Positions 5,221-64,000 of a stretch of DNA of 64,000 bases are shown piece after piece. This stretch comes from Callorhinchus milii (lineage: Eukaryota), in NCBI RefSeq assembly GCF_018977255.1, contig NW_024704742.1:108562001-108626000 (forward strand), read 5' to 3'. A program made the translations under genes and the position numbers. How positions within the stretch are numbered: the stretch's first letter is position 1; each line of letters starts with the position of its first letter. The notes under the pieces are model-generated. The model saw nothing but the letters and a program-made list of their open reading frames with translations. It was not told the DNA's origin and searched no databases.

Positions 5221-5221
5221 A

Positions 5222-17600: not shown

Positions 17601-18671
17601 CCAGTGCACAGAACGGGAAATCCCTCCTCATCAGGCCTTCCCAACTCTTCCCTTCACAAGCTGCATATCATCCAAAATTCTGCAGCTCGTGTACTCTCAC
17701 GCACCAGGCTCCGTGACCCCATACTCCCACCCTCGCCTGACTCCACTGGCTTCCCATCCCCCAGAGGATTGAGTTCAAGATCCTCGTCCTCACCTTTAAG
17801 GCCATCCATGGCCTTGCCCGCCCTCCTACCTCTCTGACCTGCTGACTCCCTACGAGCCTGCCCGTTCCCTCCGTTCATCGGGCTCTGGCCTGCTCCATGT
17901 CTCCTGCCCGACCCGCCTTACCATCGGTGGCCAGGCTTTCAGCCTCTCTGCCCCCACACTCTGGAACTCCATCCCACGGTCCCTTCACATCGCTTCCTCC
18001 CTTGCCTCCTTCGAGGCCGATCTCAAGACCTTTCTCTTCGACCGTGCCTTTGGTTTCCCTCCCACTGCCTTCCCTCACCCCTACACCATCCCTCCCCCAT
18101 GCTCGGGCCCCGACACCTGACTGTTCAGTGCTTTGGGACGTCCTCCCGACGTGGAAAGCGCTCTATAAATGTAATTTTGTTGTTGTTGTGTTTTCAAACA
18201 TTAACTTTATTGCTGTAATGTTTTTTAGAAACGTTTTGGTAAGGATTGCTTATCCTGTGCATTCTTTTGGACAGCCTGTAATTCATCTCCCATATGTGGT
18301 AAAAGAAAAGCAGAAAAGTCTGTGATAGCACTACCTTTTGTCTCTTCCTGCTAACTTCACTGATTGCTAGATTCAACACAATTTTATATGTAATCTCTGC
18401 AGATAACTAAACCTGACCATAGAATTAATCTGCAATTCCATTTCGTATAAACAATTTTTTTCACTAATTCACACATTGGGCAATAAATGAAGGGTAGTGC
18501 ATTGTCTGAGGAAATCATCTTGATAATGTTTGTATTTACCTTTGCTGATTTAGATGCTGTGTCTTTGGCTTTGGTGGGTGATGTTGGGGATGTAGGTGAT
18601 TTAGGAGATTTAGGCGATGTAGGTGATGTAGGCGAAGTTTCAATGCTTAAGCCTCCTGCTTTATTATCCAT
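14604..18671 (-). CDS. CAST: CAST C-terminal exons
   Basis: 18540-18671 (MDNKAGG..SPTSPTSPKSPKSPTSPTSPTK..SAK), 18335-18366 (32 nt, ends phase 2), and probable last exon starting at 14622 (acceptor ccttttccttctacag) giving ..RPWFQN* with TGA at 14606-14604, followed by repeat-poor UTR-like sequence. Confidence 0.65.
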
Positions 18672-21600
18672 CTGTGGGATGGACCACATTTGCTCAATGT
18701 TAAAATAGAACACTGCAGATTTGTATTCACTGGCAGTATAGCATTGATTGAGTGTGCAAGGCTGTAATGACACCTCATTGAGACTCATTATAGCACCAAT
18801 GCAGCAGATGAGCAAAGAGGGAAAAGAAAAGGAATAGGACAGAGAACTAGGCTCATCACATAACGTCTCTGACACTAGGAAGATGGATGCATAGTGAAAA
18901 CATGATCCGTAGGTTACATTTGTGCTGAAATGATGATAGCATATTAAGCATAAAGATGAAACCCTGAATATAACAGTGTATAAGGTGGAGAATGAACGCT
19001 GCTTGAAATTAACCAGAGAATTAATCAGGATTGTGACATTCTGGAGACAAGGTGTGTGATTATGTAACTCACAGGCCTGCAATGCTGAAATGGATTTTAA
19101 ACAGAGATAAAGAGGCTTTTCAGTTAAAAGACGTGGACCTGACAAGAGTTGACCAAAGACAGTCATACCTTCTTCTGCTTAGTTCCTCCAGCTTGTGATT
19201 TAGACATCAAAGTTTCAGAATTCTGGCCAAAGTCCAATGACATTGCGTCCATAACTTGAGTCTCCGTCATCTGTTAGAAGCAAAGCCATATCAATTATAG
19301 ATACACCGAGGAAAATTTAAATACTTTATTTCGCTTTCACAAGATTGAGATAAAAGTAAAACTATAAGAGAAGCAATTCTCCTTACCGAGTATTAAACAC
19401 AATTTAAGCACTTTGTTTGTAAAACATCATGTAAACGAGTGAGTTGTGCAAATTGTCAAAACTTTGTGTGAACAGATTTGTACAAAACCAATTTGTACTT
19501 ATTTAGATTGTTTCCCAGAACGAAAATGTCTCAAAGTGCTTTACAAAGACTGGGCAGGAGCCCAGCTAGTAGAGAAAAACGTCTTTAGATGAGTTTTGAA
19601 AACAGAGAGAAGGATGCTGGAAGGGAGTTGTAAAGGTTGGGAGCAAAATGTCTGAAGGCTTGTCTGCCGGTGGGGCAGAGCAGGTAGGGGACACGAAGCA
19701 GGCCAGCAGGCCAGAGTTGGTTAGGAATGGGTTTAAGATTGTAAGATTAAACACAAGATTGTGATTGCATTTTAATGGAATGTGACAGATATTGTCCTGC
19801 AGAATTGAAGTACTGACATCTGTGTAAAGCAGAGTTAAAAAAACAAGAGTTTGGAATTATATCTAGAGTGTTACAAGATTGCTTTTGGATGTGAACTTAT
19901 TAAATGGTCAGTGATGTACAAAATGAATCCAGAAGGATGTTTCTCTTTGTGTCCTGGCCAACAATCCCTCTGAATAAAATTGGTCTCTCACTTCATGGCA
20001 ATGGCTGTTGGTGGGACACTGCTGTGTGCAAATTGCCTTTGGAGTTCGCCCACAAAATTACAGTCACTCCACATTACATTATGTCCTGTGAAGCACTTTG
20101 GGATGTGCTCCAGATCTAAAAGGTGCTATAGTAACTGTAAGGATTATTACATATTTGTACCTAAGCCAATGAGACAGCTCAGTCATTGAAAGGGGAACTG
20201 AATGGATTCCTCGTTCAGCACAGAGTTAATCACAAATGGTCAAATTAAATCCTAGTTCTTCACCTGGAAGGGTTGAATCACCTTTTCTCATTTTTGTATT
20301 CCTAAAATATCATCATTTTAATAGTAAAGTTGTTTTCAGCCATTTGGCAATTGCTGCCTGGAACTCCATTCTTAGGTCCCTTCCGCCTCAAAATGTATTT
20401 CTCACCACGCTTTCAGGCATCTTTCCCCTCCTTGCCCCAGCTTAGCCCCCACCCTTGACTCCTCTGCTCAACCAGAATTGCCAGCAGCCTTGGGATGTAC
20501 TCCTGGCATGAAAGGCGCTGTATAATTGTACAATAATAATCCATGCATTTGACGTACCCCAGAAGGATGTCTCAAAGTGTTTTACAGAATTTTTATTGTA
20601 AAATGATTGTGTTGTGTAGGTAAAATTGGCAGCCAATTTGTGCACAAGCAATGTCTGATATAAAGTCATAAAGTGAGTGGCCAATTTTATCTGGGGTATT
20701 GGTGGCCAAGTCACCGGTACAAACTCCCTTCTCTTTTCAAATAGTGTCACAGGATCTTTACCATCTACTTGAACAGGAAGACGGGACCTTGGTTTACCAT
20801 ATCATCTGAAGGACAACATTTCCATTAAAGTAACAAACCTAAAGTATTGCATTGAAGTGTCAGCCTAAACTATGTGAGCTCACATAGTGAGCTTGATGTT
20901 CGGCTTGAACCTAGAACCTTCTGACTCTGAGGTGGGAGTAGCATGAACTTAACCAGGCTGACTGACACCTTGTGCAGTGCTGAAAAATATATTTCTGTAA
21001 GAAGCTAAAAAAAAATTTAATTTGCAAAAAAATGTTTACCTTTGATTTCTTTGACAGATCAATAGCAGCTCCAACTGCTGGGCCCTTATTATCTGTATCC
21101 TGTGGAACCAAAGAAGCTGTAACAAAATCTTTCCATAATCCAGCAGAATGATAATTAAAGCAAATGGTCATATATCAATCGCCGAATAAATAAACACATC
21201 ATATTTGTAACTACACTTGGACCCATATGATATAAAGCATTGTAATGTTCAGGGCTCCTTTCATAAATCCATAGAAGATATAGCTCAAAAACGGGCCATT
21301 CAGTTCATCAAGTTCAGCTGATGTTTATAGTCCACACTAGAGCCTAACCTAGATCTAGAGCACGACCCACCCGTACCCCACCAGCCCGCACTGGGGCACA
21401 GACAACCCCTGGCAGGTGGACAGAGACCCCCCAGGAGGCAGGGCACAGAGAGACGCACCCCCAGGAGGCGGGGCAGAGGTAAAGAATGCTCTAAAATTGG
21501 TGCATATTTTTATACCAATCATTTAGCTAATTCTCTATATAATTGCCTTGCAGATGCTTTATGGCATTTGACATCAGTTTAGTTTAAATGCTACATTATA

Positions 21601-24600
21601 ATTGGGGACCTTTTCACACCAGACCATTGTTCTCTCAACACACATTGTGAAGCTTTCACCACTGAGGCATAATTCAAACAATGAATGGTGATGCTATTCA
21701 CAGCACTGACCTCAGGTTTAAATCGGTAATCGGGTGGTAGAGAACTCTCCCGTTCGCCCACTTTGTTTGCAAGCTTCTCAGTAGCTGTTTTTTCCTGTAA
21801 ACAATATAAGACTCTCAAAAAAAGAAAGTAAAACATACATAGTTGCATATTGAATTAATTTACCTTAATGCAAAGAAAGTGGATTATGCTGATGTTAGGA
21901 GAGCTAAATCAATATTTAGTTATAATATAATCCTTGCATTTTGATATAGCGCTTTTCACGTCTTCTAGACGTCTCAAAGCGCTTCACAGAATATACTGCT
22001 AAGTGAATTGACTGTATATTTGTGGGCGAAACGTGGCAGCCAATTGTGCACAGCAGTGTCCCAGAAACAGTCGGGGATTGAAGTGACCATTTTATTATTG
22101 TTTTTCTTTCTTGAGGGATTATTATCAGGCATATGGAGTAAGGAAACTTGTCCAAAGTTGTGCCTTGCCGGGAATCAAACCCAGGTCTCTCGCTTGCGAG
22201 GTGAGTGCTCTAACCACTGAGCTACTGAGTTATTCATATGAAATAAAAACTAAAAAGTGCATGTGCTTGTTAGGCTGGTTAGTTCACTTTCTTTCTGATC
22301 TACTGAGTGTATGCTTTGCAGTATCCAAACCAGACTGAATTTCATATATGTATGTCACCAACACATGGAAATTTCCCATTTCTCTGGAATGGAATGTGCA
22401 CTCTCTCTCTCAGGAGGGAAGCACACTGCTTAACTAATTCTGGAAATTAGGCACAGGTTGGCAAGAACCAAGGTTTGGGAACCTCAGAGTGTGTGTTGTA
22501 CTGCTGCAGTTTAACCAACTAAAACTGTTCAGCTTGCAATCGAGAGCACCATCTGGCAAGCTTCCCACTTCTTGTCCAATTAGGACCACTTTGTTAGGGC
22601 TTGCAGGAACAACAGGAGCTGTTAGGGAAGAATCCCTGTCCCCAATAACTGGTCTACGCCTCCTGCTTCCTTGGTAAGCAGTGCAGCTCAGTGTGAAATG
22701 TGCGAGACCACTGTCGCCATCCTCCATTAATCAGTTGAACCACATTGGCTCAGAACAAGATTTTGTCAACGGGTATTACCAGAGAGTTGACAGGATCTCT
22801 CAGGCAGAAGGAAAGCCATAGAAAAACATCCAGCAGCTTGTTCAGTTTGTACTTGTTTTGCCCACAAAATACAGTCAATCCACTTTACTTCAAAATATAT
22901 GTAGCGCTTTGAGATGTCTCAATGACGTGATAAGGTGCTATGTTAAATGTGAGGATTATTTTTATTACTTTCACATGGTTTAAAAATTTGTGTGCTATGA
23001 CTTACGTAACAAGATCTTTTTCAATTTACCCCCTTGGCGGGTAAATCAATTTACCTCTATCTGTCCATATCTCTGGCAAGCAGGCATACAGTGCAGAGGT
23101 TCAGTGTGATTCAAAGATGGTGACACAGAACGTTACAAAGACAATGGCTTCAAAAATGGCAATCCGATATATGACAAAGATGGCGCTAGCCAAATTTTAA
23201 GTTCTTGCAGCTGATGTTGATGATTGGATTTTGAAAATGGCATTTCCAATGCTGCTTTCCAGAGAAACAATCAATACCTTTAACTTAGAAAGCTGCAATG
23301 TAACTGCAATGCTCCTTCAAAAACAGCAGGCCTGCCCAATGAGAATCAAAGCGATGGCTCTAAACACTTTAAACCAGCCTTCATCACTACCATTGTTCAG
23401 ACGAATGGTTGGGGGGGTAATTCCTCAAATAAGGAATGGACACATTTAGTATTATCACTATTTTTATCCCAAACACAACTGAATTCATGAATACCTTAAC
23501 TTCAGGCCCAGTGTACTTAGGACCTGAATGGACTGGGGTTTCTGGTTGAAGCATGTCTGAGAGTTCATCAAGAGCTCCCATATCTCCAATTTTACCCTAT
23601 AAAACAAAAGCACAGTTTTAACATACAGACTATGTCTAGCTGAACGTTACAGCACTTTGGTAAGCTCTCCAAACCAGGCAAAAATCAGTTAATGATTCTG
23701 TTACTGCAATCCTGATCTAGGCACCACATTTCTTTGCAAAACTATTATGAATATCGCAAGAGTCAAGAACTGGGTCTCCTTATAATTACTCTTAGTAAAT
23801 GCTGGAACGAATTCTACTGAACTGGTGAGTAAAACACTATGGCATAAGATCAATCTAGCATGTGCAAATGTTCACTCCCTTTCACTATAAGATGCCAACT
23901 TTTGATGAAATAAACTAGTTGATGTGATTTTCTATTTTGACAGTGCTTTAATTGTCAGCTTTTAAACATGATCTCTGGCTCCCGTACTCATGACCAGCGG
24001 TAATTTGAACCATTCAGATCATCAGCTAATAAGTTATGTTACACATTATTTATAAGTTTACTCTATTTGATTACTCCTCGTCTTCCTTGTCCTGCCTGAT
24101 GCCGTTAGTTGAGACTGTGTCTTTCTATTTCTTCTCGTAGGCAGACATGATTGAGGTAGTGGCTCAGCAGATGGCAATTCAAATCTGAACCTATGAATAC
24201 TTATAATGTGACTTCTACTAGAAAGACATAATCACTATTTTTTGCTTACACCATCTGATAAACCCTGCAATCTTAAAGAGCCTGAACATGGCTTCAATTC
24301 TCAACCATCTCCGTGAAAGAGACCAAAGAACAATGCTCGGTGTAAACTGGAAACATAAATTGTCAGACGTTAATAAAGATCTCCATTTTATTTGTCACCC
24401 ACCTGAGCAGCAGACTGACTTGCAGAAACTGAAGAAGCTGATGTGGCTTTCACAAATTCACATTCACTTTGATCCTTTGTAGAAGAGAGAATGAAGGTTA
24501 ATTGCATCAGTATTCACAATGACTGCTGCACTTTGAGATTCTGGGTGCAAACACTTCAGCAAGACTTCTAATGCCATTCACGAGCTTGTAAAATGGACTC

Positions 24601-27600
24601 TTTAGCCTTCTTCCTGGGATACTGGCCTAACTCAAATTGAATTGGGCCAGAGTCCTCTGAATGAACCGGAAGAGTTTTAGGCAATCAAATGTAAAGATTT
24701 ATTATTATAATTATTCCAAGATAAAAGCATCAATAGCTTTGGCACTACCAGTATTCAGAAGTTAGGTGGGAGGGTATTTGAAAGACATTTAATATCATTC
24801 CTTCAATAAGGAACAGCATTTCTTTGAACCACTGAACAAATCAGGTCTGAGTCATGTTGGAAAACATACTGTGTGAATATATGAATCACATGTTGCGATG
24901 CTTAAATTTAATTTTAAACGGAGATGAGAAAATTTTAGGTTAATAACATGGCCTGATCTAGACATATCAGAAGGGAGGCATACCTTTTTCAGCATAGGTG
25001 CTGCAGAGTGTGACTGTGCAGCTGCTGACTGTGTAATGGTAGCTGGAGAGCTCTGTATGAAGTCTGATGCCATAGCGTCCAAAAGGTCAACCTTTGAGAG
25101 AAGTTGTCAGAACAAATAAACTTTAATAATCTCACAAATAGCAAGTAAAATTAACCAATTTAATCATGAATTACATCAATTGCATTAAATAGAATTAAGG
25201 GAACCTTTACAGGGCAGAACTTTCTTTACCAGATTTTGAGAAGAACCTTTGTCCTTTTAGTGTCTCTCATTACATTGAAATGTCTCAAAGTGCTTTACAG
25301 TAACTAGTCAAAAGTAGTCATTTGTTGTAGGAAAATGCAGTAGCTGTTGTGCACATAGCAATATCCCACAATCTGTCATCACATAAATGACCAATTGACC
25401 TGGAAGACTGTTGACAATGTCATCAAGAGAATCTCCCTTTCCCTTTGATTTAACATGACACAAGTGCACAAATTGACTCATTATTCAGCATAGAGCAGAG
25501 GGATCTGCTTGGGATAAAATTAAACACAAAATGGTCAAACTGAATCCTAGTTCTTCACCTGCATAGGTTAAACTATTTTTGCTCATTTCAGTCCTTTTAT
25601 ATTATGTTGAAAAATACATCTCTTTTTCAACGTTACCCATGGAGCTAAATAATTATCAAAAATTAAAAAATAAAACATCAGTAAATGAACCCCATGTCAA
25701 AGTAACACGTCACCTCTGGTTTCTTTACTGGATCAGTGGGAGCACCAACAACTGAGCCTTTTTTATCTGTTCCCTGTGGAATCAAACAAACTGTAATGAA
25801 ATACTTGCATGATGAAGTGAAATGATACAGAAATAAAGAAAAGGTCAAATAGCAACAGTAAAATCACTAAACATATTTCATATTATAACAACTCTCCCTT
25901 ATATATAGTCAGTTCACACAGGGAAAACATTTCAAACATACTTTGCAAAGATGAAATTGGTGCCTGAGCTGGATGGGGTTGGGGTGGTGGAGGAATGTAG
26001 GGAGGAAGTGGGTACAAGCACAGTGAGATAGGTTAGAGATTGGTTTCGGAAGCAGACTGATAAATTGCAGCTATAGCAATTTTGTAGCAAGTGCACAACT
26101 GGATTGTTTTTAAACGGTATTTCATAGCCCTCTTCCTTTTCCATATTGGAACCCAATAGAGATATTCTACTGCATTTTTAAAGTTTAAACACCAAGTCAT
26201 GACTCAGATGGTGATGTTATTCACAGCAACGATCTTAGGATAAAATCTGTAAAAAAACAATCCAGATGTTCTCTGAACACAGCAGTATTTTGAGAGGTCC
26301 AATTCTCAGGTTTAATTCAAATGGTGATGTTATTCACTGCACTGACCTCAAGAATGAATCGGTAATCAGGTGGTAAAGAATCCTCCCGCTCGCCCACTTT
26401 GTCTGCAAGCTTCTCACGAGCTGCTTTTTCCTAAAGACAGAAAATAAAGTTTAAAATGTATAACAAGCACAGTTCATGTATTCATTTACTGTGCTCAATA
26501 AAAAGGAGGCTCTTAAGGTAGAAAAATTAAATCAATTTGTACTTATTTCATTTAAGCAAAGTCCTGTCCACACAAGGTACATTAAGACCAAGGTCTGTCT
26601 GGCTAGTCCAGCTGAACCAGGTTGGTTATGATTAAGTGTTTGGACAAAGAGCAGTTCCAATTCACTGTGTGTTTTGTGGGCGAAACACGGCAGTTAATTG
26701 TGCACTACAGCGTCCGACAAACAGTCACGGATTGAGTGACAAAATTATTACTTTTTCTTGAAGGAATTATTACCCCTGGAAAAGCGATCCGCCAATTGAA
26801 CCAGGTTCCTACTTACTGCTAGGTAAACAGAGGTACGTGGAGTAAGGAAACTTGCCCAATGTTTCGCTCCACCCAGCAAATAAACCCAGGTCCACTCGCT
26901 TGCGAGGAAAGTGCTCACTTCCCACACCACCCTATATATACTCATACATACAAATTAACATCAAAGATAATAGAATTCATGAGACCAGCATCATTGGTAC
27001 CTTAACTTCAGGTCCAGTGTACTTAGGACCTGAATGAACTGGGGCTTCTGGTTGAAGCATGTCTGAGAGTGCATCAAGAGCTCCCATATCTCCATTTTTA
27101 CCCTATAAAACAAAACCACAGTTTTCAACATCCACACAATCTTTAGCTGAATGGTGACTGAAAGCAATATCATAGGAACACAGAAAAATGGGAACAACAG
27201 GAGGCCATTCAGCCTATCAAACCTGTTCCACCAATTTATTAGATCCTGGTAGTTCTTTCAATCACTATTTCCTACCCTGAATCCAATATTCGACTTGGAA
27301 TCTGTCTGTAAAACCACATTGTCTCAAAATATAAGAATATGCAACAGCATTCTGGAAAATTCAGAAAAAAAATCAATCTTCATTTGGAAAACTTCTACAG
27401 TTCTTAGAAACACCAATTTACAAATTAAGAATTTCTGTTTAGTTTTCAGTTCTAAAACAGGATTTTGCAGACTAAGACCTGGTGGAATTTCAAGCCTCTA
27501 TATGATGTGAAAGAGGTTATCAGTGTCTCAGGATTCAACAAAAAAATTAAACTCAAGACTAAATGGCCCTAACTTGTCTAATAGCTTATTCTTCTAAGAC

Positions 27601-30600
27601 TGGGGAACATCCTCATTGCTCTCCTTTGTATTGCCTCTAGGGCCTTGGTCAGTGCCCTTCGGTCACCGCGACTAAAACTGAATACAGTACACTAGGGGCG
27701 GCCTGACCAGAGGACTGTACAGCCCCAGTATGACTTCTGTGATCTGAACTCAACAAATTTGGCAAATAGCCCCAATCCTGTGCTTCTTATCTTTAATTTA
27801 GCATGTGTGTGTACTCAGTGTAGGCTGACAAGCAAGCACTATATGCAGGAGAGAGGGGAGGAGAGAGAGGCTGATAATGTGGGGGATGATAATGGGATTA
27901 TTATTGGAAACAAGTAAGTTTTTCTAAGTGATAGATAAAGGAGGGTGGGAGGACTGGCATTGCATTGGACTATAGTTAGAGAGTTTGACTTCTGATGGAA
28001 ATACCATTCAGTTAGTACTGTACATCTCACACAATAGAACTGCACAATGAGCTGATATCCACATTCTTGAGATTCACAATGGGCTTCACCAGTCGCTATT
28101 TGTGTAGATAATGGGGTCTCTACTTACTGGACCTTAGTCTGTGAATCCAGGTCACTTACGTGTACAAGGAACAGAAGGGGGTTCAGCACAAATCTGGGAG
28201 GCATCTCAAAAAATACCTCTCTGGTTTCACCCTAGCTCCCCTCCCTAAACACCCACTGCTTCCTTGCATTAAGGCATTATACATCCACCTGCATGCCTTA
28301 TCCTGGTTGGCAAAGGGTTCTCTTGCATGGTACTTTGTGGCATTTTGGAAACCTGTTTTTTCCCCGGTAATAATCCCATTAGCACTGACTGGTTGGCACT
28401 CGCATTATAAAGACATAGTGAAAAAAAATGTGGGGTTGAGCAGTTATTGTATGATATAATTCTATCCTAACACGGTTTCATTTTTCAACCCTGTATAATA
28501 GACTCAGTTAAAGACCGACAGTCAGTTTCCATCATAAACAGAAATTCTCAATCATTGCTAAAGGTCTCCCATTTTCTCGTTACTCACTTTAGGAGCAGGT
28601 TGACTTGCAGAAACAGAACAAGCTGCTGAGGCTTTCACAGGTTCAATTTGATCCTTTATAGAAAAGAATAATAATTGATTACGTCAGGTTTCATTGCCTC
28701 CAATGATCGCTACAGGTTTAATAATACTCCCTGCATTTGATATAGTACCTTTGATGTCAAGAGGATTTCTTATAGTGTCCAACAGGATTTACTGCAAAGT
28801 GCAGTGACTTGTGTGCAAATTGGCTGCTGCTTTTACGTACAAAATACAGTGATTACACTTTACAGTATAGTATATCCTATGAAGCGATTTGACACATCCT
28901 CCCACCCTGAAAGGCGCTATATCAAATGCAAGGGTTATTATTACTGCACAGGAAGGATTTTCAAGTTAAAAATTGATCAACACTTGACAGAAGGGAGTCA
29001 TACCTTTGTCTGCTTAGGAGGTGCAGCATGTGAAGATGCCACTGCAGACTGTGTAATGATAGCTGGTGAGCTCTGTGCAAAGTCTGATGCCATAGCGTCC
29101 AGAACGTCAGCATTGGTCAAAAGCTGTCAGGACACCAAACAATAAGGAATATATTTTATTAATGCAAATCTGAAATCTACCTATAAACCTAAATGATTTT
29201 ACCAGCAAATACTCAACATTGAATCTAAAACATGTGTAGAATAACTACTATATCTTTTCCAGAGAAAGAAACATCATATAAGTACATGATTTAAATGACA
29301 AGTCTAGTGGGACTTGGGCTAAGTAAAATAAATCTCAATTTTCTTGGACTCACCTAACTCACACCCATGTAAAAGCTGTTTCTCGGCATTCTCCCTACTA
29401 CCAGAGGATAATTTTTGACACAACACTCATTTTATTCACTTCAAAAGAACAATGGCCTAAAGGGATCAACTGAGAAGCCAGCTCAGAACATCTTTTTGCT
29501 AGTCCAGCACTTAACCCAACTGCCTACAACACTGTTGTTGTAATATTGTTTTCCCTATCAGGTAGCTACAGTACCTATTGAAAAAATAGAAGGGGGTTTA
29601 TCATGGTGTCTTGGCTAACAATCCCCCAAATTAAAAAAATGGTAATTAATTCCATGGATATTTGCGAACATTCCTGTGCGCAAATTGACTGCTGCGTTCG
29701 CCTAAAAATACAGTCACTACACTTTATAGTATATCCTCTGAAATGTTTTGGGAAGTTTTGACGATGTGATAATCCTTATCAAGTACAAGTATTATTATCA
29801 TAAACCCCTTTGATCTGAACTGGCTCCAAGGTGATGTGTTTGGTAATGGAATGGCAGAATTGATCTGTCCTTCTGTGGCGGACTCCAGAAGTGTGAGAGG
29901 TGGTGGGATGGCATTATTCCAGATTACGTGACTCGATGCATCTTGACCCGTCACTGGAGGTGCACTTACTGACAAACAATGGGATCGCATTGAATCGTGG
30001 GAAATGAAGGTCAATGCAAACATCGACAGATCAAGGCAACTTTTCTCACGATTCAACGCCGACGGCCGGTTAAGTGCACTCGCATCAATGGGTCTGGATG
30101 TCATTTCCCATGATTCAATACAGCCGGTAAGTCTGGGGGTAATGGAAAATAGGGTTTACTGATTAGGAGGTGATAAATACGACTCGTGCAAAGTAATCTA
30201 AGTGGTTTTGATAGGAAACTGAATGGAACTCAGGTGTATGTATGACTTGGACAATTATACGATTTATAAAACATGTCAATTTTACTGAAATCCCATGAGA
30301 TCTTTAACGTCCACCTGAACAGACAGAAGGGACCTCAATTTAACATCTCATCTGAAGGGCAGCATCTCCAGCAAAACAATGCCCCCAGCACTGTCTTGTA
30401 GTGTCAGACTAGACTTTGCGTTCAAATTCCCAACATGTGGCTTGAACCTACAACGCTTTGTTTCAGAGGAAACTGATATGAAGATAGACATTTTAGCAAG
30501 AAGCTAAATATCAGCTACAGTTTGCATACAAATACAATCAACCTCTTGATGCCAATAATTGAGTGTCATGCATCAGGAAGACTTTACCTCTGGCTTCTTT

Positions 30601-48600: not shown

Positions 48601-51600
48601 TGCGACCCAGAGGTACTAACTGAGCTAAGGTTTGCCTTTAAATGAGAATAGTCAAAGCCCTAAAATAGAACCCAAATGAGAGACCTGAGTTCAATTCCAG
48701 GCAGGGGGAAACCTTGGGCAAGTTTCCTTACTCCACACGCCTAATAATAATCCCTCCAAAACCCAAAACAATAATAAATTGGTCATTTTCAATCTACGAC
48801 TGTTTGTGGGACATTGCTGTGCGCAATTGGCTGCCGCATTCGCCCACAAATATACAGTCAATTCACTTTACAGTGTGTTCTGTGAAGCGCTTTGGGACGT
48901 CCTCCTGACGTGAAAAGAGCTATATCAATATGCAAGGATTATTATTATAAAGCATCTTTCCTTGTACCCTTGTAGCCACTTAAAGAAAAGCAATAACTGA
49001 AAGCAGTCAAATACTAAGAAGGAATGTATGAATTGTGTGCCGGTAAATTTAACCTTGTGTCTCAGTGAGCTTTTACCTTTGGTTTCTCTGCCGGATGAAC
49101 GTGAGTGCCAACACTTGTGTCCTTTTTACTGGTAGCCTGGGAATCAAACAAACTACCATGAAATCCTTCCATAATGGAGTGTTACAATGTTGAATTAAAA
49201 CAGTGATAGAATCATTAAAAGTACATCTTATTTCTATTTACAATTGATCTCACAAATGGAAAGCTGCTTTGGTGTTCAGAGTTCTTTTGAATCATGCAAA
49301 CACAACAACAACACAATTATATTTGTATAGCGCCTTTCACATCAGGAGGACGTCCCAATATAATTCAAACAGCGATATTATTCACAGCACTGACCTCAGG
49401 GAGAAGTCTGTATTCAGGTGGTAGAGAATCTTCCCGCTCTCCCACTTTGTCGGCAATCTTCTCGCAAGCTGTTTTCTCCTAAAAAGAAATGTTTTAAAAG
49501 AAGTGAACATCACATTTCATATATTTATTTACTGTGTTCCATACAAAAAGAACACCAAAGTTAGGAAAGCTAAATACATGTGTATGTTATTCAGCTGAAA
49601 TGAGAACATGTATTCCAAGGTTCAAGTGAAACTCTTCAGTCTTTCTTTTTTGTTGTCCAGCCGGTGTCTGACACATATGAAAATCCATCGCAATGCTGAA
49701 GAGTATTTACACCAAACTGATTGTTCCATACATCCCACCTACACATGGAAATCCCTATGTATTGGAATGTGCACTCTCTCCTAGGAGGGAAGCATTCCGC
49801 TTACCTAATTCCACAAAGTATTAGTTTGAGGCTGGCAGGAACCAAGGCTAAGGGACCTAATACAATACGTTAGAGTACTGTTGGGAGTTTAACCAGCTAA
49901 AACTTCAATGTGCAAAGCAATCTCTAACAAGCTTCCCATTGCTTGTCCAGCTAGGACTGCCTTACCTGCTAAGGCTTTGGCTTGCAGGGTTAACAGGAGC
50001 TGAATGGGAAGAATTCCCCGCCCCAGTCTGCCACTCCACGTCGTACTGAATGAGCCAGGCTGCCTGGTCTGTCATCAGAAGGGCCTGGAATACTGTGGAC
50101 ACACCTGGCTCATTACTGAGAGTGCTACAGAGGTTTGACTCGATTCCAACAACCCATCTGGTTAGTTCACTTAAGACTACTTGTTTCAAACTATTGATTT
50201 CAGTTGCAAAAATAGGATGGGTTGCATAATCTAAATGGTAAAATAATAAAAGGTGAATTATCAAGATGGAATAGGTGGATAATTAAAAAAGGCAAAGTAA
50301 ATAGAGGTAAATTATAGTTACAATTTTACATCTATAAAGCACCTTTCACGTCAAGAGGATATCTTAAAGTGCTTCACAGAGCCAAATGGGAGCCTGAGCT
50401 TGGAATGGGGGGAGTCGAGGAAGAGAGGTGGGGAGGTGACCAAAAGCACGGTCGAAAAGGAAGGTCTGAAATAGTAAGTCACTGTAAGGAAAATGTGAAC
50501 TTGTAATTATGTTTAAACACAATGTACAGTAATATGAGTGATAAGCAGACATAAAGATTCATATAACTGTGTCTTTTAATACCTTAATTTGAGGGCCAGT
50601 ATACTTAGGACCTGAATGGACTGGGCCTTCTGGCAGAAGCATGTCCGAGAGCTCATCAAAAGCTCCGTGAGCATCAGTTTTACCCTATAAATAAAGGACA
50701 TCTTTCAATATTCACATAATCTCTAGCTGTACCGTATCCAAAAGCAATGCCGAATATATTATAAGTTGAAAAATGGGAAATAAAAGTTACTGCTGCACCC
50801 ACATGCACACCAAAGTCTCTCCAGTGTAGTAAAATAAAGTGCCCTGGAAGTCTTTAGGAAATCCCTTGCTTTCATCTATTAAACAACAATTTCTTGTCCA
50901 CCACCTTCCAGATAAATGCACTTGATGAAATGAACCAAAACAGATCAATTCTAGACATTTTAAAATGCAGGCAGTGCAATTTAGGTTGTGACTCAGAAAA
51001 ACACAATCTTGACCTAGGCACAACATTTCTTTGCAAAGAATTTATTACTGATCCAGGATTCAACATTTTTAAAAATTTATTTTTTTCAGCTTGGTATCTG
51101 ACACACCAGGCTTAAGAATATCCAAAACAGACTGAGTTCCATAAAAGGCAAAATACTGCAGATGCTGGATATCTGATATAAAAACAGAAGTCGCTGGTAC
51201 ACTCGGGGTGTCAGGCAGCATCTATAGAGAGAGAAAAGTGAGTTAACGTTTCAGGTCGATGAACTTTCGTCAGAACTCAGTTCCACATATGTATGGAAAT
51301 GGAATGCAACTCTCTTGCTGGATGTATGCACTCCGCCTACCTAATTCCAGAGAGTATTAGTGTGGGATGGCAAGAAGTGAGTTTGGAAGACCTCTGAGCT
51401 CCGTGATAAGACTGGGAACCATTTTAATCCGCGTGCTGTTTAGTGGATTGAAAACCAATACACCCACATTACTGAGGGACATGATTCTCCAGTTAAAAGC
51501 ATAGATTTTGACAAGAGATGGAAGCAGCAAGCTTACCTCTTTCTGCTTCGATGCGGCTGCTTGAGAGTAGGACGGTGGTGGTGCTGCAGACTTTGAAATT

Positions 51601-54600
51601 GAAGCATCAGACTTGATGTCAAAGGTCAGAGGATCTATAAGAGCTTTGTCTGTCAGAACCTGGCAGTAAAGCACACAAAGAGAATTCAGGTATATAGACT
51701 TAAAATACACGGAGTAAAATTACACCAATACAAACAGAAAACTGCTACAACCTCACCCACAGTCCTAAAGCACATATTAAACAAGTTAAAAGAAAAACAA
51801 AAAGGCCCGGGTAATAATTTGTTTCTAAAAGTTCAAGAAAAATGCAAAGTAGGATTTACCTCCCCAGGGATTGACCTTAGTTTTGTCTCTGGATAAGCAC
51901 TCGTTTTAATCTGTGGAAACAGCATTGTGTAAAAATAAAAACAAATAGTTAAATAAAAACAACAAACAAACAAACAAAAGAACTACAGTTATGATCAATG
52001 GAACCCTTGCTTTGCTGGGGGGACATTTGCAACTCTTGGAAGACTTGCTATTTTGTGCACCTCTGAGCCACCACTTAGCCTATCTGGTAATGAAGTGCTG
52101 CCTGAATTGGGATTCCGTATTTATTTCCTCTTCTCTTCCTGATGTTCAGCAAAATAACATAAGTTAACCAATTCAGAGCTAGTCCAGTGACCTCTATATA
52201 GCAAGTAGAATACTCTATCAAATAACACTATTGGTGCTAAAGTTTTCCTTTTGCTGTGAGTAGGCGCCTGGCCTTTACGTAGCAACTTCCCACCATGGGA
52301 TGATTGAAATCAATAGTGGAAAATCACAAATGCAGGAATGGTAGGCACAGACCTGAGTGTCATCACACTGTGATTTCCCAGAGGGAATATATACCAATTT
52401 ATATCATTTGAATCGTAGTTTGAACAGAATGTTGATAAATAACTGCTGCAGTGCTGCATTGTAGACATTGATGTGGACAAATTGTTTGTCTCAATCCTTA
52501 CAAACACAATCGCTACATTTAAAGGTAATTGTTGTACAGCGTTTTGAGTCGCTGCCTCCGAAGGAAGGCACCTATGGCAACTTTGCACTTTCTCAGCACT
52601 GTACTGGAGTTTCAGCCAAGATCTTGCTTGAATCCACAACCTTCTGATCCAGAGGAGAGAGCGTACTAACTGAGCCAAGCTATTGGATATCATTTGAACT
52701 AAGAATAATTATACAACTGAACCTTAGTATTTGGATCCTCTTCAAATCTGTAGTCTGGTGGTATGGTTCTCTCATCTTCCCCTAACTTCTTAATCTTCTT
52801 CTCAGATCGTGGATCTTCCTAAAAATTAGAGATAAAATGTTATTTTAAAAAGGCAAAATTTAATCGAGATTAAGGTTTCGGTGTTTCATGAGTTCCAGAA
52901 AAAGAAACTACTTGTTAGACACTAAACCTTTGATATTGCAACTTTTACATCAAGAGAAAATCTCAGTGTTTTGCAAGCATTGCATTGTTGGAGTTGCTGT
53001 CCCACAAACACCCATGAAGCAAATAGCCATTTTATCTTGAGGACCATGAGTTACTTTCTTTCTTTCTGAACAGTGCCATGGGATCTTTAAACATAGTTTG
53101 GCCTGTACATGGGAACTGTATTTCATCATTACATCTGCAACAAAATGTCACGCATACCTGAACATTGGGGCCAGTGTATTTAGGAGCTGTAGGACCAGTG
53201 TCTTCAGGCAGAAGTGTGTCTGCCAACAAACTGACAGCACTTGGATCTGATTTACCCTTTATAGACAAAAGAGCATGTTTCAATATTTTAAACAGGAATC
53301 AACTGAAATGTACTCCCAGAGCACTGTTATACATATTATACTTAAGCAAAAGGTTATTCCAACTGCAGTAAATTTTGATAATTGAATACTCAATTTGACA
53401 GTGAAAATTATTCAATAAACCAAACTAAACATTGTTCAGGAGATGAGGAGAATACATTCACGCTGCATGATGATATTCACGCTGAATGTAGTGATTTGGG
53501 ACTTGGTGTTTTTCCAGACTCAGATTAATTGTTTTATGTATGAGTGGACATGGGGAAAATTATTCAAAAAAATGAATTATTTGTATATCCAGCATTGAAT
53601 TAACAAATCTATATTCTTTGATTAGGTGTGCAAATGGTTTGATATTTCTAAATTCTATTCAATAAACCAAATTATTCAATTATCTAATTTCATGTAATAG
53701 AATTTCACTATAAAACACAGTTGGCAAGATCAATGACTATAATAATATTCTGGCTCCAAAGAGCAAAATGCGGCCAAAGGCACATTTAATCAGCTGCTTC
53801 TCTACTAATGGGTGTAAAATCCACTCGGCAGTTTTCATTGAAAACAAATCTCTCTACGGTTTCATTACAAGTCTTGTATCTGCATCACTGTGATATGAGA
53901 GCTGTAATACAACCCAAGCGAGCTGGCAATCACTGCAGGAGGTTACACACCACTTGAGAAAGCAGCTGCTGACACCGTACATTTAAAGTCACAAATACAA
54001 AAACCCTCAGATGTCTCAATTAGCCATCTTTTCATTTCAAAATTCCAAGTCCCTCTAAGATATGAATGTTGCTCCTTCATCTGGGGAGATTCTTCCACTT
54101 CAATCGATCTCCAGAACAAAAGACTTGCCATTGTACAAGTGAGGTCTTTCTCACTTCGAACTTTCTTTTGTCACAACCCATCGATCTCTATTTTATCATT
54201 CTACAATGATGTTTGCTCCTCTAAACATTCATTCACTCTTGTTCTTCACCAATTTAAATCTGCAATAATCTACACACTTCCTTCTTGCTGACTTTCACTG
54301 TTGTAAAATGAAAACTCATTGTACCATCTCCTAATTATAATACATTGTTTTCCTCCCTTCAGTTTTTCCTATGACATCCAGGCTTTCCAAGCCGGTGGTG
54401 GGCATGTTCCTAACTACTTTTTTTTAATGTATCTTGTCCTTCCTCTTATTTTTTTCAATCCTGTCCTATGTGCCTGGCCTTTGATTAAGGGAAAATGACC
54501 AAGAAGAGCTGACTATTCTGTAAACCCATCCATTATTAGAAAAGTAACTGGTTTACTGAGACCATTGGCAGCATGCCTTTTGCATGTTTCAGTGTCGATA

Positions 54601-57600
54601 CCTTTCTTCCAGTGATGTCAATGGGTGTAAATGTTTAGGCTGTCATGTTCATAGTCTGTTTGACATCCATTGGATTCTGAACCAATGGTGAAATGTAACT
54701 GGAGCATTAGTAGTGAACTCTTCCTTTGCTACCTACCTGAGCAGCACTTTTATTTGCAGAACCTGAAGCAGTGGATGAAACACTTGCAGATTCCTTTGGA
54801 TTCTTGGGCTGCAACAGAATAAAATTAAGTTGAAATATCCCTGCAAGTCTCAACCCCTTGCTCTCAACACTCAAAGCCATTTCTATGACTTCTGATGTAG
54901 CAAAATAGAATTATATGCAGAACAAAAGGGTCACTGATCAAACAACCTCAGGCATATTGTTAATACGTCATCACTTGCCTCACCTCCAAACTCCAAACAG
55001 CACCACTGTGGTGTTTACATTTCACACATCAAACCAAACCATGCTTTTTGCCTGAGACTACCAGTGTAGTACCAAATCTGAGAGCAGTTTAATGTTGTGA
55101 CCTTGTGCCCACTGGATTGAGATTGCCCAAACTGGCATGGAACCCTTAACACCATTAAACTGATTGGTAACTGCTTCCATCAGTTTGGAACAGAATCCAA
55201 GCCAGTTCCCAGAGTTACAAAATATGTATGGAAATCTCATCTTGGTTTGAATACTCTTAACCATGGTGCTGGGTTTCCACATGGGTCAGACACCCAACTG
55301 ACCAAAAAATATATTAGAACTACTGTGTCAACCAGGTCACAACCTGGAAAAGCATAAACCTCTAGCCCAAATAGCCATCATAAAAGCATCTTTGATATAT
55401 ATGTGACATGGTAAGAAGCTATTTAGTTTGAGAAAACACTCGTTTACAGAAGCACAATTTCAGACATGTTAACTTGCCATATAAAAACTCAGTATTTTGT
55501 TTTTGTAAAATCAGGCGGTCTGTGGATTTTCTCTGTCGTTTGTATTGAAATCTCCTCGAAATCACACAGGGAAAAGGCAGTAGAATGGGACTAAACAGAG
55601 AGCTCTTTCAGAAAGCAATGCAGGTGCGATGGGCTGAATGCCCTCCTTCTGTGCTGTAAATTTTTAATAGGACAAATGGTGTCAGCCTGGCTTGATGGGT
55701 AGTACTCTCATCTCCGCGTCAGAAAGTTGTGGGTTTAAGCCCCACATTGAGACTTTGAACTCAAGTCTTGGCATACTCCCGTGCAGTGCTGGGGGGTGGG
55801 ATGGGCTCTCCTGATTGGCTCCCATCAGCGCCTCCACACCTCAGATGCTGACAGCATCACCATCCATGTTTGCACACTCCACTTTACTAAGCCAGTCCGG
55901 AACTTGGAGTCTTGTTTGACCCTAAATTATCCTTTCTACCCCACATCCATGCCATGACCTGCACTGCCTTCCCCCACCTCTGCAACATCGCCCGGCTCCG
56001 CCACTGTCTCACACCGCAGGCAGCCGAAACCCTCACACAACCATTCATATCATGCAGGCTTGACTATGCAAACTCCTTGCTTGTCGGCCTCCCCAACTTC
56101 TCCCTCCGTAGGCTGCAGATCATCCAGGATTCTGCAGCCCGTGTTCTCTCCCCCATCAGGATCCGTGACCCTAGCAACCCCATCCTCCCATGACTCCACT
56201 GGCTTCCCATCACACAGAGGATACAATTCAAGATCCTTGTCCACACCTTGTTCTCCACTATCTCTGTGACCTCCTAACCCCCTACCATCCTGCCCGCTCC
56301 CTCCGTTCAGCAGGCTCCGGCATGCTTCACGTCCCCTGCCTCACCCTCCCCACCATTGGCGGGGCGTGCCTTCTGCCGCTCTTCCCCCACTCTCTGGAAT
56401 TCCATCCCGCAGTCGGTCTGCCTCGCCCTCTCCCTTGCCTCCTTCAAGACCCACCTCAAGACCCTCCTCTTTGACCGTGCTTTCGATTACCCTGCTTCAC
56501 CCCTACCTCCGCTCTCCCCAATCCCGATCCCCAGCTCAGGTCTGGTGAAACACTGTGCAGCGCCTTGGGATGTCCTCCCGACATGGAAGGCGCTTTACAA
56601 ATGTAATTTTGTTGTTGTTGCTGTTGTTGTAAGGGGGTGGGGGGGTGGTGGGTGGTGGTGAGAAGAGAAGAGCAATAAACAAGAACAGAGCTGTTTCCTG
56701 GCTTGTTATCCCCACCACAGTAGTTCTGTACTGGTTTGAGGAAACAGTTACACTCATGTTTATACCTACAGAAGACCATGTAGTAGAACAGTTTATGGAG
56801 AACACGATTTTCTCATTGCCAACATCATTTTCCCCTTTATACCTACTGCTGAACTGATCACTCCAGAAATTGAACACTACACATCTTCGGATAGTGTTCA
56901 CTTGTTCAGGATTCAGTCAATATTTTAAGAGAACTCTTTAAATTTGAATTCAAGATCCTCATCCTCACCTACAAGGCCATTCACGGCTTTGCTCCCTCCT
57001 ACCTCTCCGAACTACTATCCCCCTACTTACCTGCCCGTACCCTCCATTCCTCTGGCTCCGGTCTGCTCAACATCCCCCGCCCCAACCACCCTAACATCGG
57101 TGGCTGGGCCTTCAGCCTCTCAGCCCCGAGCCTCTGGAACTCTATCCCCAGTGCCTTCGCCGCCGCCTCCCTTTCCTCCTTCAAGGCCGGTCTCAAGACC
57201 TTTCTCTTTGACCGTACTTTCAGCTCCCCTCTCGACTCTCTACCCCCTCCTCGCTCCCTCCCCTCACCCTGACCATTTCCCCCCTGCTCGGTTCCTAACC
57301 CAACAGTCCAGGGCCTTGGAACGTCCTCCCGACGTGAAAGGCGCTCTATAAATGGAATCTTGTTGTTGTTATAACAGTGCCTTAAATCATATCTATCCAC
57401 ATCATAGTACAATTATGCTATTCCATATAACACAGCTAGAAATACCAAACTAACACATATTATTGTTCTTAAGATTAGAGATTCGTAGAAAATCACTATT
57501 GTAGTTTAGCATTTTTTCCAACCTCCAAAATGCCCAGAACACATTAACAACTTCCCTTGAAATGGAGAGAAAGTTAGACATGAAAGCCTGAATTTGTCAA

Positions 57601-63726: not shown

Positions 63727-64000
63727 CTTGTGTTGAAATTCAAGAATATTTAGTATTAAAATATTGAGCAAGTGAATGAATTTTTTTAAACAAGTAAACA
63801 ACCCGATTGTGCTGTAAGCAAAGTCACGCTACAATGAAATGTGGCAAAATGTGTTTCAGCGAGAGATGCAAAGAGTATCAAGACAGCTATTATATGCTCA
63901 CAGTTACACCCCATGAGAATTGCCCTGGTACACGATCCATCACAACATTAATAATTATCTGCTGGGTCTATATAATTAAAAAGAAAAATTTGTCTGCCCG

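What the first reader, a model, noticed from the sequence alone, without database searches (positions are those of the whole stretch)
19169..54808. Calpastatin with seven inhibitory domains built from a tandem phase-0 exon cassette
Seen: seven complete A-B-C exon sets (A exons at 53158, 50583, 44589, 37822, 31954, 27001, 23495), all open. Domains 2-5 share the same exon pattern 102/84/60/120/66 nt, i.e. 144 aa. Established: mammalian calpastatin has four such domains, each able to inhibit one calpain molecule. Inference: a lineage-specific expansion that raises inhibitor valency. Because every exon is phase 0, skipping whole cassettes could tune the number of domains per isoform. I cannot say from sequence alone whether this has been described.
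Basis: partly seen in the sequence, partly recalled or inferred. Interest (0 to 1): 0.85.

Follow-up and report, generated by a model that had tools for sequence, protein, structure and literature searches.

The report
Elephant-shark calpastatin gene, seven inhibitor repeats
This is the calpastatin (calpain-inhibitor) gene of the elephant shark, really built from seven repeated exon cassettes, but the seven-repeat protein is already in public databases and sharks and rays carry seven to ten such repeats, so it is a correct but ordinary observation.

Summary
On the minus strand, 19169-54808 holds seven A-B-C inhibitory units of calpastatin. All exons have AG/GT borders and phase 0; units 2-5 are 102/84/60/120/66 nt. 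All 7 of 7 B exons pass Pfam Calpain_inhib on their own.

The copies are 6-25% diverged in exons, and the introns of units 4 and 5 are 16% diverged, so this is not a false assembly duplication. Spliced contigs from RNA-like runs of three studies join Y4-A5-B5-X5-C5 and Y5-A6-B6.

The window is Callorhinchus milii CAST. The public protein A0A4W3JTD9 (1256 aa, 7 Pfam stretches) maps to it at 95-100%.

Seven is not unusual. 14 of 15 elasmobranch species listed have 7-10 repeats, bony fishes and amphibians mostly 5-6, and birds and a lizard 3-4.

Units 2-7 form a C. milii-only clade. The copies were therefore made or homogenised in the chimaera lineage, but high repeat number is general outside amniotes.

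Four of nine annotated isoforms have six repeats; cassette skipping is unproven. I found no paper on this.

The parts
63673..63729 (-). N-terminal (L-region) coding exon; the first 74 aa of the public protein lie outside the window
   Evidence: Exact match to aa 75-93 of P0001
62616..62669 (-). N-terminal coding exon
   Evidence: Exact match to aa 94-111 of P0001
62384..62509 (-). Alternative N-terminal exon (126 nt), used in P0168 and P0170 but not in P0001
58811..59068 (-). 258-nt N-terminal exon
   Evidence: Exact match to aa 112-197 of P0001; no Pfam family
54737..54808 (-). 72-nt exon just before unit 1
   Evidence: Exact match to aa 198-221 of P0001
53158..53256 (-). Unit 1, A exon (99 nt)
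   Evidence: AG/GT borders, phase 0; A alignment
52723..52818 (-). Unit 1, B exon (96 nt)
   Evidence: PF00748 26.9 bits
51537..51659 (-). Unit 1, C exon (123 nt), with a degenerate C motif
50583..50684 (-). Unit 2, A exon (102 nt)
49395..49478 (-). Unit 2, B exon (84 nt)
   Evidence: PF00748 31.2 bits
49077..49136 (-). Unit 2, X exon (60 nt, B-C linker)
47628..47747 (-). Unit 2, C exon (120 nt)
45306..45371 (-). Unit 2, Y exon (66 nt, linker to the next unit)
44589..44690 (-). Unit 3, A exon
44014..44097 (-). Unit 3, B exon
   Evidence: PF00748 28.7 bits
43021..43080 (-). Unit 3, X exon
42229..42348 (-). Unit 3, C exon
38964..39029 (-). Unit 3, Y exon
37822..37923 (-). Unit 4, A exon
37082..37165 (-). 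Unit 4, B exon
   Evidence: PF00748 32.3 bits
36292..36351 (-). Unit 4, X exon
33981..34100 (-). Unit 4, C exon
33666..33731 (-). Unit 4, Y exon
   Evidence: the Y4-to-A5 joint is seen as a 'goes back' joint in 3 of 4 runs
31954..32055 (-). Unit 5, A exon
   Evidence: A5-to-B5 joint in 3 of 4 runs
31440..31523 (-). Unit 5, B exon
   Evidence: PF00748 29.5 bits; B5-to-X5 joint in 3 of 4 runs
30588..30647 (-). Unit 5, X exon
   Evidence: X5-to-C5 joint in 3 of 4 runs
29004..29123 (-). Unit 5, C exon
   Evidence: the link from C5 to Y5 is seen only as loose ends
28588..28653 (-). Unit 5, Y exon
   Evidence: Y5-to-A6 joint in 4 of 4 runs
27001..27102 (-). Unit 6, A exon
   Evidence: A6-to-B6 joint in 4 of 4 runs
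26347..26430 (-). Unit 6, B exon
   Evidence: PF00748 29.2 bits
25714..25773 (-). Unit 6, X exon
24984..25091 (-). Unit 6, C exon (108 nt); the acceptor homologous to the other copies, at 25104-25105, reads AA
   Evidence: exact match in 9 of 9 public isoforms
24403..24474 (-). Unit 6, Y exon (72 nt)
23495..23596 (-). Unit 7, A exon
21711..21794 (-). Unit 7, B exon
   Evidence: PF00748 26.3 bits
21040..21099 (-). Unit 7, X exon
19169..19270 (-). Unit 7, C exon (102 nt)
18387..18671 (-). Last coding exon (S/P/T/K-rich tail) of P0001 and P0168; P0170 instead uses 18671-18540 plus 15896-15846
   Evidence: no Pfam family

Best explanation
The region is the central and 3' part of the calpastatin (CAST) gene of the elephant shark, Callorhinchus milii, read on the minus strand.

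It encodes an intrinsically repetitive inhibitor with seven calpain-inhibitory units. Each unit has a subdomain A helix motif, the B motif G-x4-[ST]-x-P-P-x-Y-R and a subdomain C helix motif. Each sits on its own phase-0 exon, with two linker exons (X and Y) between them.

By analogy with the mammalian protein (inference, not tested here), each unit should bind one Ca2+-loaded calpain. Subdomains A and C would dock on the two penta-EF-hand domains, and B would lie over the active-site cleft. The full-length protein could then hold up to seven calpains.

The array grew by tandem duplication of the whole 5-exon cassette of about 5-6 kb. This is shown for units 4 and 5 and inferred for the rest.

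The gene is transcribed and the middle cassettes are spliced in. The seven-unit model is already public, and seven is within the normal range for cartilaginous fishes.
For: - Exon anatomy with canonical splice sites, all phase 0.
- 7 of 7 B exons pass Pfam PF00748 singly.
- The B profile hits the calpastatin chains 3bow_C (E 1.2e-5) and 3df0_C (E 0.0069).
- The best PDB hit of the A profile is 3df0_C residues 2-28, at a weak E of 0.1.
- G, E, P, P, Y and R of the B motif are invariant in all 7 copies.
- P0001, which is UniProt A0A4W3JTD9 'Calpastatin, Callorhinchus milii', maps to the window exon by exon at 95-100%. It has 7 PF00748 stretches.
- Between copies, dS is 0.16-0.61 and dN/dS 0.23-0.63.
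- 53% of the intron bases of unit 4 align to unit 5 at 84% identity, against 0-14% for the other pairs.
- Canonical joints A5-B5, B5-X5, X5-C5 and Y4-A5 occur in 3 of 4 runs. Y5-A6 and A6-B6 occur in 4 of 4 runs. The runs come from three studies.
- An ERAP-like Peptidase_M1_N ORF lies downstream on the same strand. This fits the CAST-ERAP1 neighbourhood that I recall from human 5q15.
Against: - A and C exons alone give no Pfam hit, and the C profile finds no PDB chain. The A and C assignments rest on motif, on position, and on lying inside the Pfam stretches of the public whole protein.
- The C motif of unit 1 is degenerate.
- The C exon of unit 6 has lost the acceptor that the other copies use.
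- Six of seven B motifs have Ser where the mammalian hot-spot peptide has Thr. The same variants are common in other vertebrates.
- The runs are only guessed to be RNA, and they are contigs. They show presence, not proportions. The C5-Y5 link is seen only as loose ends.
- No binding or inhibition was measured.
Confidence: 0.9

Rival explanations
1. The seven units are older than the chimaera lineage. A many-unit array already existed in the chondrichthyan ancestor, and units 2-7 look C. milii-specific only because gene conversion has homogenised them (concerted evolution), not because they were duplicated late.
For: - The 144-aa spacing between B motifs is shared by C. milii and many elasmobranch proteins.
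- Units also cluster by species in several sharks. Pristiophorus has identical units, which points to ongoing homogenisation or very recent copying.
- For pairs other than units 4 and 5, only exons and short flanks align.
Against: - Units 4 and 5 share 53% of their intron sequence at 84% identity. This equals their exon dS of 0.16, as a plain duplication predicts.
- The graded dS (0.16, about 0.24-0.35, 0.40-0.61) looks like successive duplications.
- Batoid units keep 1:1:1 orthology, so homogenisation is not universal.
- The AU test rejects placing unit 7 with the last units of elasmobranchs (p 0.004). Conversion would give that result as well.
Confidence: 0.3
2. The usual protein has fewer than seven units. 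One or more cassettes are habitually skipped, or are decaying pseudo-exons, so the effective valency is lower than the genomic count.
For: - 4 of 9 public C. milii isoforms have six units. Each lacks about one repeat length, 144-166 aa, in a different register.
- The C exon of unit 6 has lost the ancestral acceptor.
- All exons are phase 0, so any skip stays in frame.
Against: - 5 of 9 public isoforms carry all seven units.
- Every cassette is open, with dN/dS below 1.
- Contigs join Y4 through C5, and Y5 through B6, with C5-Y5 seen only as loose ends. No skipping joint is among the 15 joints shown; 5 joints and 182 loose ends were not shown.
- The six-unit models could be mis-joins of short reads across near-identical exons. 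The X4 and X5 peptides are identical.
Confidence: 0.15
3. The extra cassettes are a false tandem duplication made by the assembler.
For: None found. The window's A3, C3 and C4 peptides differ slightly from all public isoforms, so at least two versions of the locus exist.
Against: - The copies differ by 6-25% in exons and about 16% in the introns of units 4 and 5. Assembly duplicates are near-identical.
- The public models that differ slightly from the window also have seven units.
- Unit-specific spliced contigs exist.
Confidence: 0.02

Closest known systems
Mammalian calpastatin (CAST; Pfam PF00748; complexes 3BOW and 3DF0 with rat calpain-2)
   Same: - The same family: all B exons pass the Pfam cut-off.
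- The same A-B-C order within each unit.
- The B motif G-x4-[TS]-x-P-P-x-Y-R aligns to the inhibitor chains of 3BOW and 3DF0.
- The A motif plus YTGP aligns to 3df0_C residues 2-28.
- PMC4057710 (passages read) gives the mammalian consensus for A, B and C. It states that all three subdomains must bind for effective inhibition.
   Different: - Seven units instead of four.
- Ser-Leu or Ser-Ile replaces the Thr-Ile hot spot in six of seven units.
- Units 2-7 are much more alike than the four mammalian units are said to be (recalled).
- A long S/P/T/K-rich C-terminal exon is present.
Public C. milii calpastatin models (UniProt A0A4W3JTD9 = P0001; A0A4W3JQ56 = P0168; the cluster holding XP_007891286.1 = P0170)
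   Same: The same gene. Exons match the window exactly or nearly so, and each model has seven PF00748 stretches or B hits.
   Different: - The window's A3, C3 and C4 peptides differ by a few residues from all nine public isoforms.
- P0170 adds exons 51910-51857 and 40363-40202 and has another 3' end.
Elasmobranch calpastatins (for example Scyliorhinus torazame X6, Carcharodon carcharias X3, Pristis pectinata X3, Pristiophorus japonicus X23)
   Same: - Many-unit calpastatins with the same spacing of about 144 aa.
- PF00748 stretches: 10, 9, 8 and 7 respectively.
- 33-43% identity to P0001.
   Different: - Their units form a clade apart from C. milii units 2-7 (SH-aLRT 99 and 96).
- 11 of 15 species listed have more units (8-10) than C. 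milii.
Calpastatins of bony fishes and amphibians
   Same: The same family. They also exceed four units: mostly 5, and 6 in Lucifuga, Antennarius, Fundulus diaphanus, Sebastes and Lissotriton.
   Different: - Units are longer and less regular (spacing 130-230 aa).
- Their units fall in a separate clade (SH-aLRT 98).

Membership tests
Calpastatin (Pfam PF00748 Calpain_inhib) | Sequence match to the family profile above the curated cut-off | tested here: met
   7 of 7 B exons score 26.3-32.3 bits against a cut-off of 22. The public whole protein of this gene scores 363 bits with 7 stretches. 0 of 7 A exons and 0 of 6 C exons scanned hit on their own; C7 was not scanned.
Calpastatin (Pfam PF00748 Calpain_inhib) | Subdomain B inhibitory motif G-x4-T-x-P-x2-Y-R (consensus as quoted in PMC4057710) | tested here: met
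   G, P, P, Y and R are invariant in all 7 copies. Thr is present in unit 1 and Ser in units 2-7. The profile aligns to 3bow_C and 3df0_C.
Calpastatin (Pfam PF00748 Calpain_inhib) | Subdomain A amphipathic helix motif upstream of B | tested here: met
   An A-L-D-x-L-x-D-x-L motif followed by P-x-Y-T-G-P in units 2-7, looser in unit 1. The best PDB hit is 3df0_C residues 2-28, but only at E 0.1.
Calpastatin (Pfam PF00748 Calpain_inhib) | Subdomain C helix motif downstream of B | tested here: inconclusive
   A D-A-M-A-x-D-F motif is present in units 2-7 and degenerate in unit 1. The profile finds no PDB chain at E up to 10. C5 lies inside the best Pfam stretch of P0001, residues 849-972.
Calpastatin (Pfam PF00748 Calpain_inhib) | Tandem repetition of inhibitory units after a non-inhibitory N-terminal region | tested here: met
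   Seven units follow N-terminal exons at 63729-54737. The one N-terminal exon scanned (58811-59068) gave no Pfam hit.
Calpastatin (Pfam PF00748 Calpain_inhib) | Ca2+-dependent, specific inhibition of classical calpains, one enzyme per unit | not testable with these tools
   Needs recombinant units and an enzyme titration.
Vertebrate CAST orthologue | Genomic neighbourhood next to an ERAP-type M1 aminopeptidase (recalled from human 5q15; not checked in a tool) | tested here: met
   ORF 935-1450 on the minus strand matches Peptidase_M1_N at 70.6 bits. That human CAST and ERAP1 are neighbours is recalled.

The most novel reading that the evidence does not exclude
The number of calpastatin inhibitory units is not a fixed 'four'. 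It is an evolutionarily labile trait, ranging from 3-4 in the amniotes seen here (birds and a lizard) through 5-6 in bony fishes and amphibians to 7-10 in cartilaginous fishes.

The variation would come from recurrent, independent tandem duplication of one phase-0 exon cassette, with homogenisation in some lineages. On this reading the C. milii array is an independent amplification in the chimaera lineage, and in-frame cassette skipping gives isoforms of different valency.

No paper in the searchable library describes this pattern.
Probability: 0.45. Interest if true: 0.45.

Novelty: already known. Interest (0 to 1): 0.25.

Why it matters
For the gene itself, little. It is a correctly recognised, already annotated calpastatin.

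The wider pattern seen while checking it may be worth a short comparative note. Textbook calpastatin has four inhibitory units, yet public gene models outside amniotes carry 5-10, and the units cluster by lineage. If real, this gives a natural series for asking how inhibitor valency scales with calpain load. It would also be a clean example of growth of a disordered, repeated protein by exon-cassette duplication. None of it changes how calpastatin is thought to work.

Tried and rejected
- **Assembly artefact:** rejected on divergence between copies.
- **Pfam on single A and C exons:** no hits. These exons are too short or too weak alone, so this is not evidence against them.
- **PDB profile search with the C exons:** no hits.
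- **Orthology of unit 7 with the last elasmobranch unit:** rejected by the AU test (p 0.004). I named the group after seeing the tree, which weakens the test.
- **Placement of unit 1:** left open. Its end branch is 1.55 long, and it sits with the last elasmobranch units at SH-aLRT 93, with no starred support.
- **Cyclostome or invertebrate outgroups:** none appeared among the 20 clusters I looked up. Two weak hits with six stretches (P0093, P0095) are unrelated proteins named Merlin and Piwi.
- **Literature:** seven searches gave no paper on calpastatin unit number in cartilaginous fishes. PMC10707392 only lists a shark calpastatin fragment in a table (one passage read). Subscription journals are not searched. 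I recall, but did not see, a trout calpastatin paper that reports fewer units than in mammals.
- **Our earlier findings:** the word search for 'calpastatin' met nothing.

Full report
**What is in the sequence**

A motif scan of all six frames put calpastatin-like A, B and C motifs only on the minus strand, in seven ordered sets between 19.2 and 53.3 kb. The window has no N.

Alignment of the paralogous blocks and a coordinate check fixed every exon.
- Units 2-5 each consist of five exons of 102 (A), 84 (B), 60 (X, a linker), 120 (C) and 66 nt (Y, a linker). That is 432 nt or 144 aa.
- All exons have AG and GT borders and all are phase 0.
- Unit 1 is 99/96/123 nt and has no Y exon.
- Unit 6 has a 72-nt Y exon, and its C exon has AA where the other copies have the acceptor AG. 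An in-frame AG 12 nt further on gives a 108-nt exon, which all nine public isoforms use.
- Unit 7 has a 102-nt C exon and no Y exon.

**Is it calpastatin?**

I searched them one by one.
- All 7 of 7 B exons pass Pfam PF00748 (Calpain_inhib) on their own, at 26.3-32.3 bits against a cut-off of 22.
- The 7 A exons and the 6 C exons scanned gave no hit alone; C7 was not scanned.
- A profile of the seven B exons finds the calpastatin chains of 3BOW (E 1.2e-5) and 3DF0 (E 0.0069) in the PDB.
- The best PDB hit of the A-exon profile is 3df0_C residues 2-28, at a weak E of 0.1.
- The C-exon profile finds nothing.
- In the B exon, G, E, P, P, Y and R are invariant in all seven copies.
- The position that is Thr in the mammalian hot spot is Ser in units 2-7. 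The hot spot is quoted in PMC4057710, of which I read passages. Ser/Thr and Ile/Leu variants at these positions are common in sharks, bowfin and paddlefish, so this does not argue for loss of function.

**Whose gene it is**

An exhaustive profile search with the B exons gave 103 proteins at E up to 0.001. The best, P0001 (389 bits, 7 stretches), is UniProt A0A4W3JTD9, 'Calpastatin, Callorhinchus milii', 1256 aa. It maps to the window at 95-100% identity, exon by exon.

The window is therefore the elephant-shark CAST locus. The gene runs on the minus strand from beyond 63729 to a stop near 18387, and the first 74 aa lie outside the window. Pfam finds 7 stretches in P0001 and in P0170, the cluster that holds XP_007891286.1.

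The window's A3, C3 and C4 peptides differ by a few residues from all nine public isoforms. This suggests another assembly or another individual. Both versions have seven units.

Downstream on the same strand, ORF 935-1450 matches Peptidase_M1_N. This fits the CAST-ERAP1 neighbourhood that I recall from human.

**Real duplication or artefact?**

- Self-comparison shows exon blocks 74-94% identical and mostly unalignable introns.
- Nei-Gojobori counts, summed exon by exon, give dS 0.16 for units 4 and 5, 0.24-0.35 among units 3-7, and 0.40-0.61 for unit 2 against the rest. dN/dS is 0.23-0.63 throughout.
- 53% of the intron bases of unit 4 align to unit 5 at 84% identity. For the other 20 pairs the share is 0-14%, part of which is interspersed repeats.
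- Intron divergence of about 16% matches the exon dS of 0.16. Units 4 and 5 are thus a plain tandem duplication of the whole cassette, followed by neutral drift in the introns and constraint on the exons.

Copies this different cannot be a false assembly duplicate.

**Expression**

Thirteen runs of one coded organism were offered. I laid four of them, from three studies, on 26340-32070. All are Logan contigs, and their RNA nature is only a guess of the record.

Contigs carry joints with CT..AC ends, which are GT..AG on the minus strand, at exactly my exon borders:
- A6-B6 and Y5-A6 in 4 of 4 runs.
- A5-B5, B5-X5 and X5-C5 in 3 of 4 runs.
- A 'goes back' joint from 32056 to 28589, with 6 mismatches in the Y part, in 3 of 4 runs. 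I read this as Y4-A5, with Y4 (outside the laid stretch) placed on its paralogue Y5.
- C5-Y5 only as loose ends of 16 and 9 letters.

Exon bins are covered at tens to hundreds, and most intron bins at 0-8. The middle cassettes are therefore in processed transcripts.

No cassette-skipping joint is among the 15 joints shown. Five more joints and 182 loose ends were not shown, and contigs drop rare forms, so skipping is not excluded.

**How unusual is seven?**

I counted B-profile hits of at least 8 bits in the proteins returned. Counts are per listed isoform, so they are lower bounds for a gene.
- **C. milii:** 7 in 5 of 9 isoforms and 6 in 4 of 9.
- **Elasmobranchs, 15 species:** Scyliorhinus torazame 10; Carcharodon 9; 8 in Pristis, Hypanus, Mustelus, two Chiloscyllium species, Hemiscyllium, Amblyraja, Rhincodon and Stegostoma; 7 in Rhinoraja, S. 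canicula and Pristiophorus; Leucoraja 5.
- **Teleosts:** mostly 5, with 6 in Lucifuga, Antennarius, Fundulus diaphanus and Sebastes.
- **Other bony vertebrates:** bowfin, paddlefish, lungfish and frogs 5; salamanders 5-6; gar and a coelacanth isoform 4.
- **Birds and Anolis:** 3-4.

Pfam confirms 10, 9, 8 and 7 stretches for four of the elasmobranch proteins.

So 14 of 15 elasmobranch species have at least seven units, and C. milii sits at the low end for cartilaginous fishes.

**History of the units**

I built a quick maximum-likelihood tree of 93 units from 14 species, using 140-aa slices of public proteins and 144 alignment columns.
- C. milii units 2-7 form one clade (SH-aLRT 96), with units 4 and 5 as a pair (96).
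- All 59 remaining chondrichthyan units (58 elasmobranch units plus C. milii unit 1) form another clade (99).
- Unit 1 has a very long branch (1.55) and is not placed reliably.
- Batoid units show 1:1:1 orthology.
- Shark, bowfin and paddlefish units tend to cluster by species.
- Holding unit 7 together with the last elasmobranch units costs 63.8 log-likelihood units (p-AU 0.004). I named that group after seeing the tree.

So the copies in C. milii were either made after the split between holocephalans and elasmobranchs or have been homogenised since. For units 4 and 5 the introns show duplication. For the older pairs I cannot tell the two apart. The shared 144-aa period suggests that the cassette itself is ancestral to cartilaginous fishes.

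**Isoforms**

Each of the four six-unit public isoforms lacks about one repeat length, in a different register:
- P0172 goes from X4 to C5.
- P0174 goes from a C exon straight to A6, losing 166 aa.
- P0175 goes from A5 to B6.
- P0173 goes from X4, through a C exon that matches neither C4 nor C5 exactly, to Y5.

The X4 and X5 peptides are identical and other paralogous exons are near-identical, so short-read transcript models can mis-join them. I treat the isoforms as a lead, not a finding.

**Mechanism**

The shown steps are family membership, seven intact units, constraint on them and their inclusion in spliced transcripts.

The inferred step rests on the mammalian complexes. I recall 3BOW and 3DF0, and PMC4057710 (passages) states that A, B and C must all bind. 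On that basis each unit would bind one Ca2+-activated calpain: A and C on the two penta-EF-hand domains, and B across the active site. The full-length protein could then hold up to seven enzymes. Units 1 (degenerate C) and 6 (C shortened by four residues) are the most likely to be weaker.

**Literature**

Seven searches found no paper on the unit number of calpastatin in cartilaginous fishes, nor any paper using phrases such as 'five/six/seven inhibitory domains' together with calpastatin. One shark skin proteomics paper lists a calpastatin fragment in a table (PMC10707392, one passage). Subscription journals and supplements were not searchable, so this is weak evidence of absence.

**Verdict**

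The gene is an ordinary calpastatin that is already annotated with seven units, and its relatives have as many or more. What remains mildly interesting is the comparative pattern of a labile unit number, from 3-4 to 10, with lineage-wise clustering of units. I could not find this in print.

Noticed in passing
window 935-1450 (-): A 172-aa ORF with a signal-anchor-like start matches Peptidase_M1_N at 70.6 bits. It is probably the first coding exon of an ERAP-type aminopeptidase, downstream of CAST on the same strand. That would be conserved synteny with human CAST-ERAP1 (recalled).
   Followed up: partly
window 25104-25105 (-), acceptor of the unit 6 C exon: The acceptor AG shared by the other six C exons reads AA here. 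The public models use an AG 12 nt downstream, which removes four residues in front of the C motif.
   Followed up: yes
window 44589-44690, 42229-42348, 33981-34100 (-): The window's A3, C3 and C4 peptides match none of the nine public C. milii isoforms exactly. In the public proteins the A3 position carries the A4 peptide. This could be allelic or assembly variation, or conversion between units.
   Followed up: partly
window 51857-51910, 40202-40363, 62384-62509, 15846-15896 (-): Extra exons used only in some public isoforms (P0170, P0168): an 18-aa X-like exon in unit 1, a 54-aa exon between C3 and Y3 of doubtful coding look, a 42-aa N-terminal exon and an alternative last exon.
   Followed up: partly
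window 58811-59068 (-): This 258-nt exon of the N-terminal region was noted earlier by the scan (s1-904309). It matches aa 112-197 of P0001 exactly and is in all three isoforms mapped. It has no Pfam family.
   Followed up: partly
window 20005-20149, 28806-28943, 34372-34469, 38827-38932, 39554-39743, 44268-44412, 48803-48948: An interspersed repeat of about 100-190 nt sits in many CAST introns. Copies are 76-97% alike. Two bins are extremely deep in the RNA-like contigs: 28836-29027, which overlaps the copy at 28806-28943, and 26724-26915, where one search shows only a different short repeat. Depths reach 1,300-50,000. It is probably a SINE.
   Followed up: no
window 10113-10184 (+) and 22167-22225 (-): Two tRNA matches in Rfam (45.1 and 42.1 bits). 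The second is partial (model positions 7-64) and lies in a CAST intron. They may be heads of tRNA-derived SINEs rather than tRNA genes.
   Followed up: no
window 3338-5223, 6493-6621, 16655-16771: Long C- and CA-rich tandem arrays, with periods from 2 to 268 nt. They explain the G+C of 0.56-0.58 and the strong negative GC skew at 2-6 kb.
   Followed up: no
window 14658-15065 (+); 45725-46246 (+) and 17613-18187: Retroelement remains. One ORF matches RVT_1 at 74.2 bits. A 0.57-kb stretch at 17613-18187 is repeated at 46017-46587 at 89.5% identity, partly overlapping an ORF (45725-46246) that has no Pfam hit; one copy is inside the CAST intron between Y2 and C2.
   Followed up: no
proteins P0002, P0008, P0218 (Pristiophorus, Amia, Polyodon): Some species have nearly or fully identical neighbouring calpastatin units. 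Three Pristiophorus units are identical over the slice used. This points to very recent duplication, gene conversion or an annotation or assembly artefact in those records.
   Followed up: no
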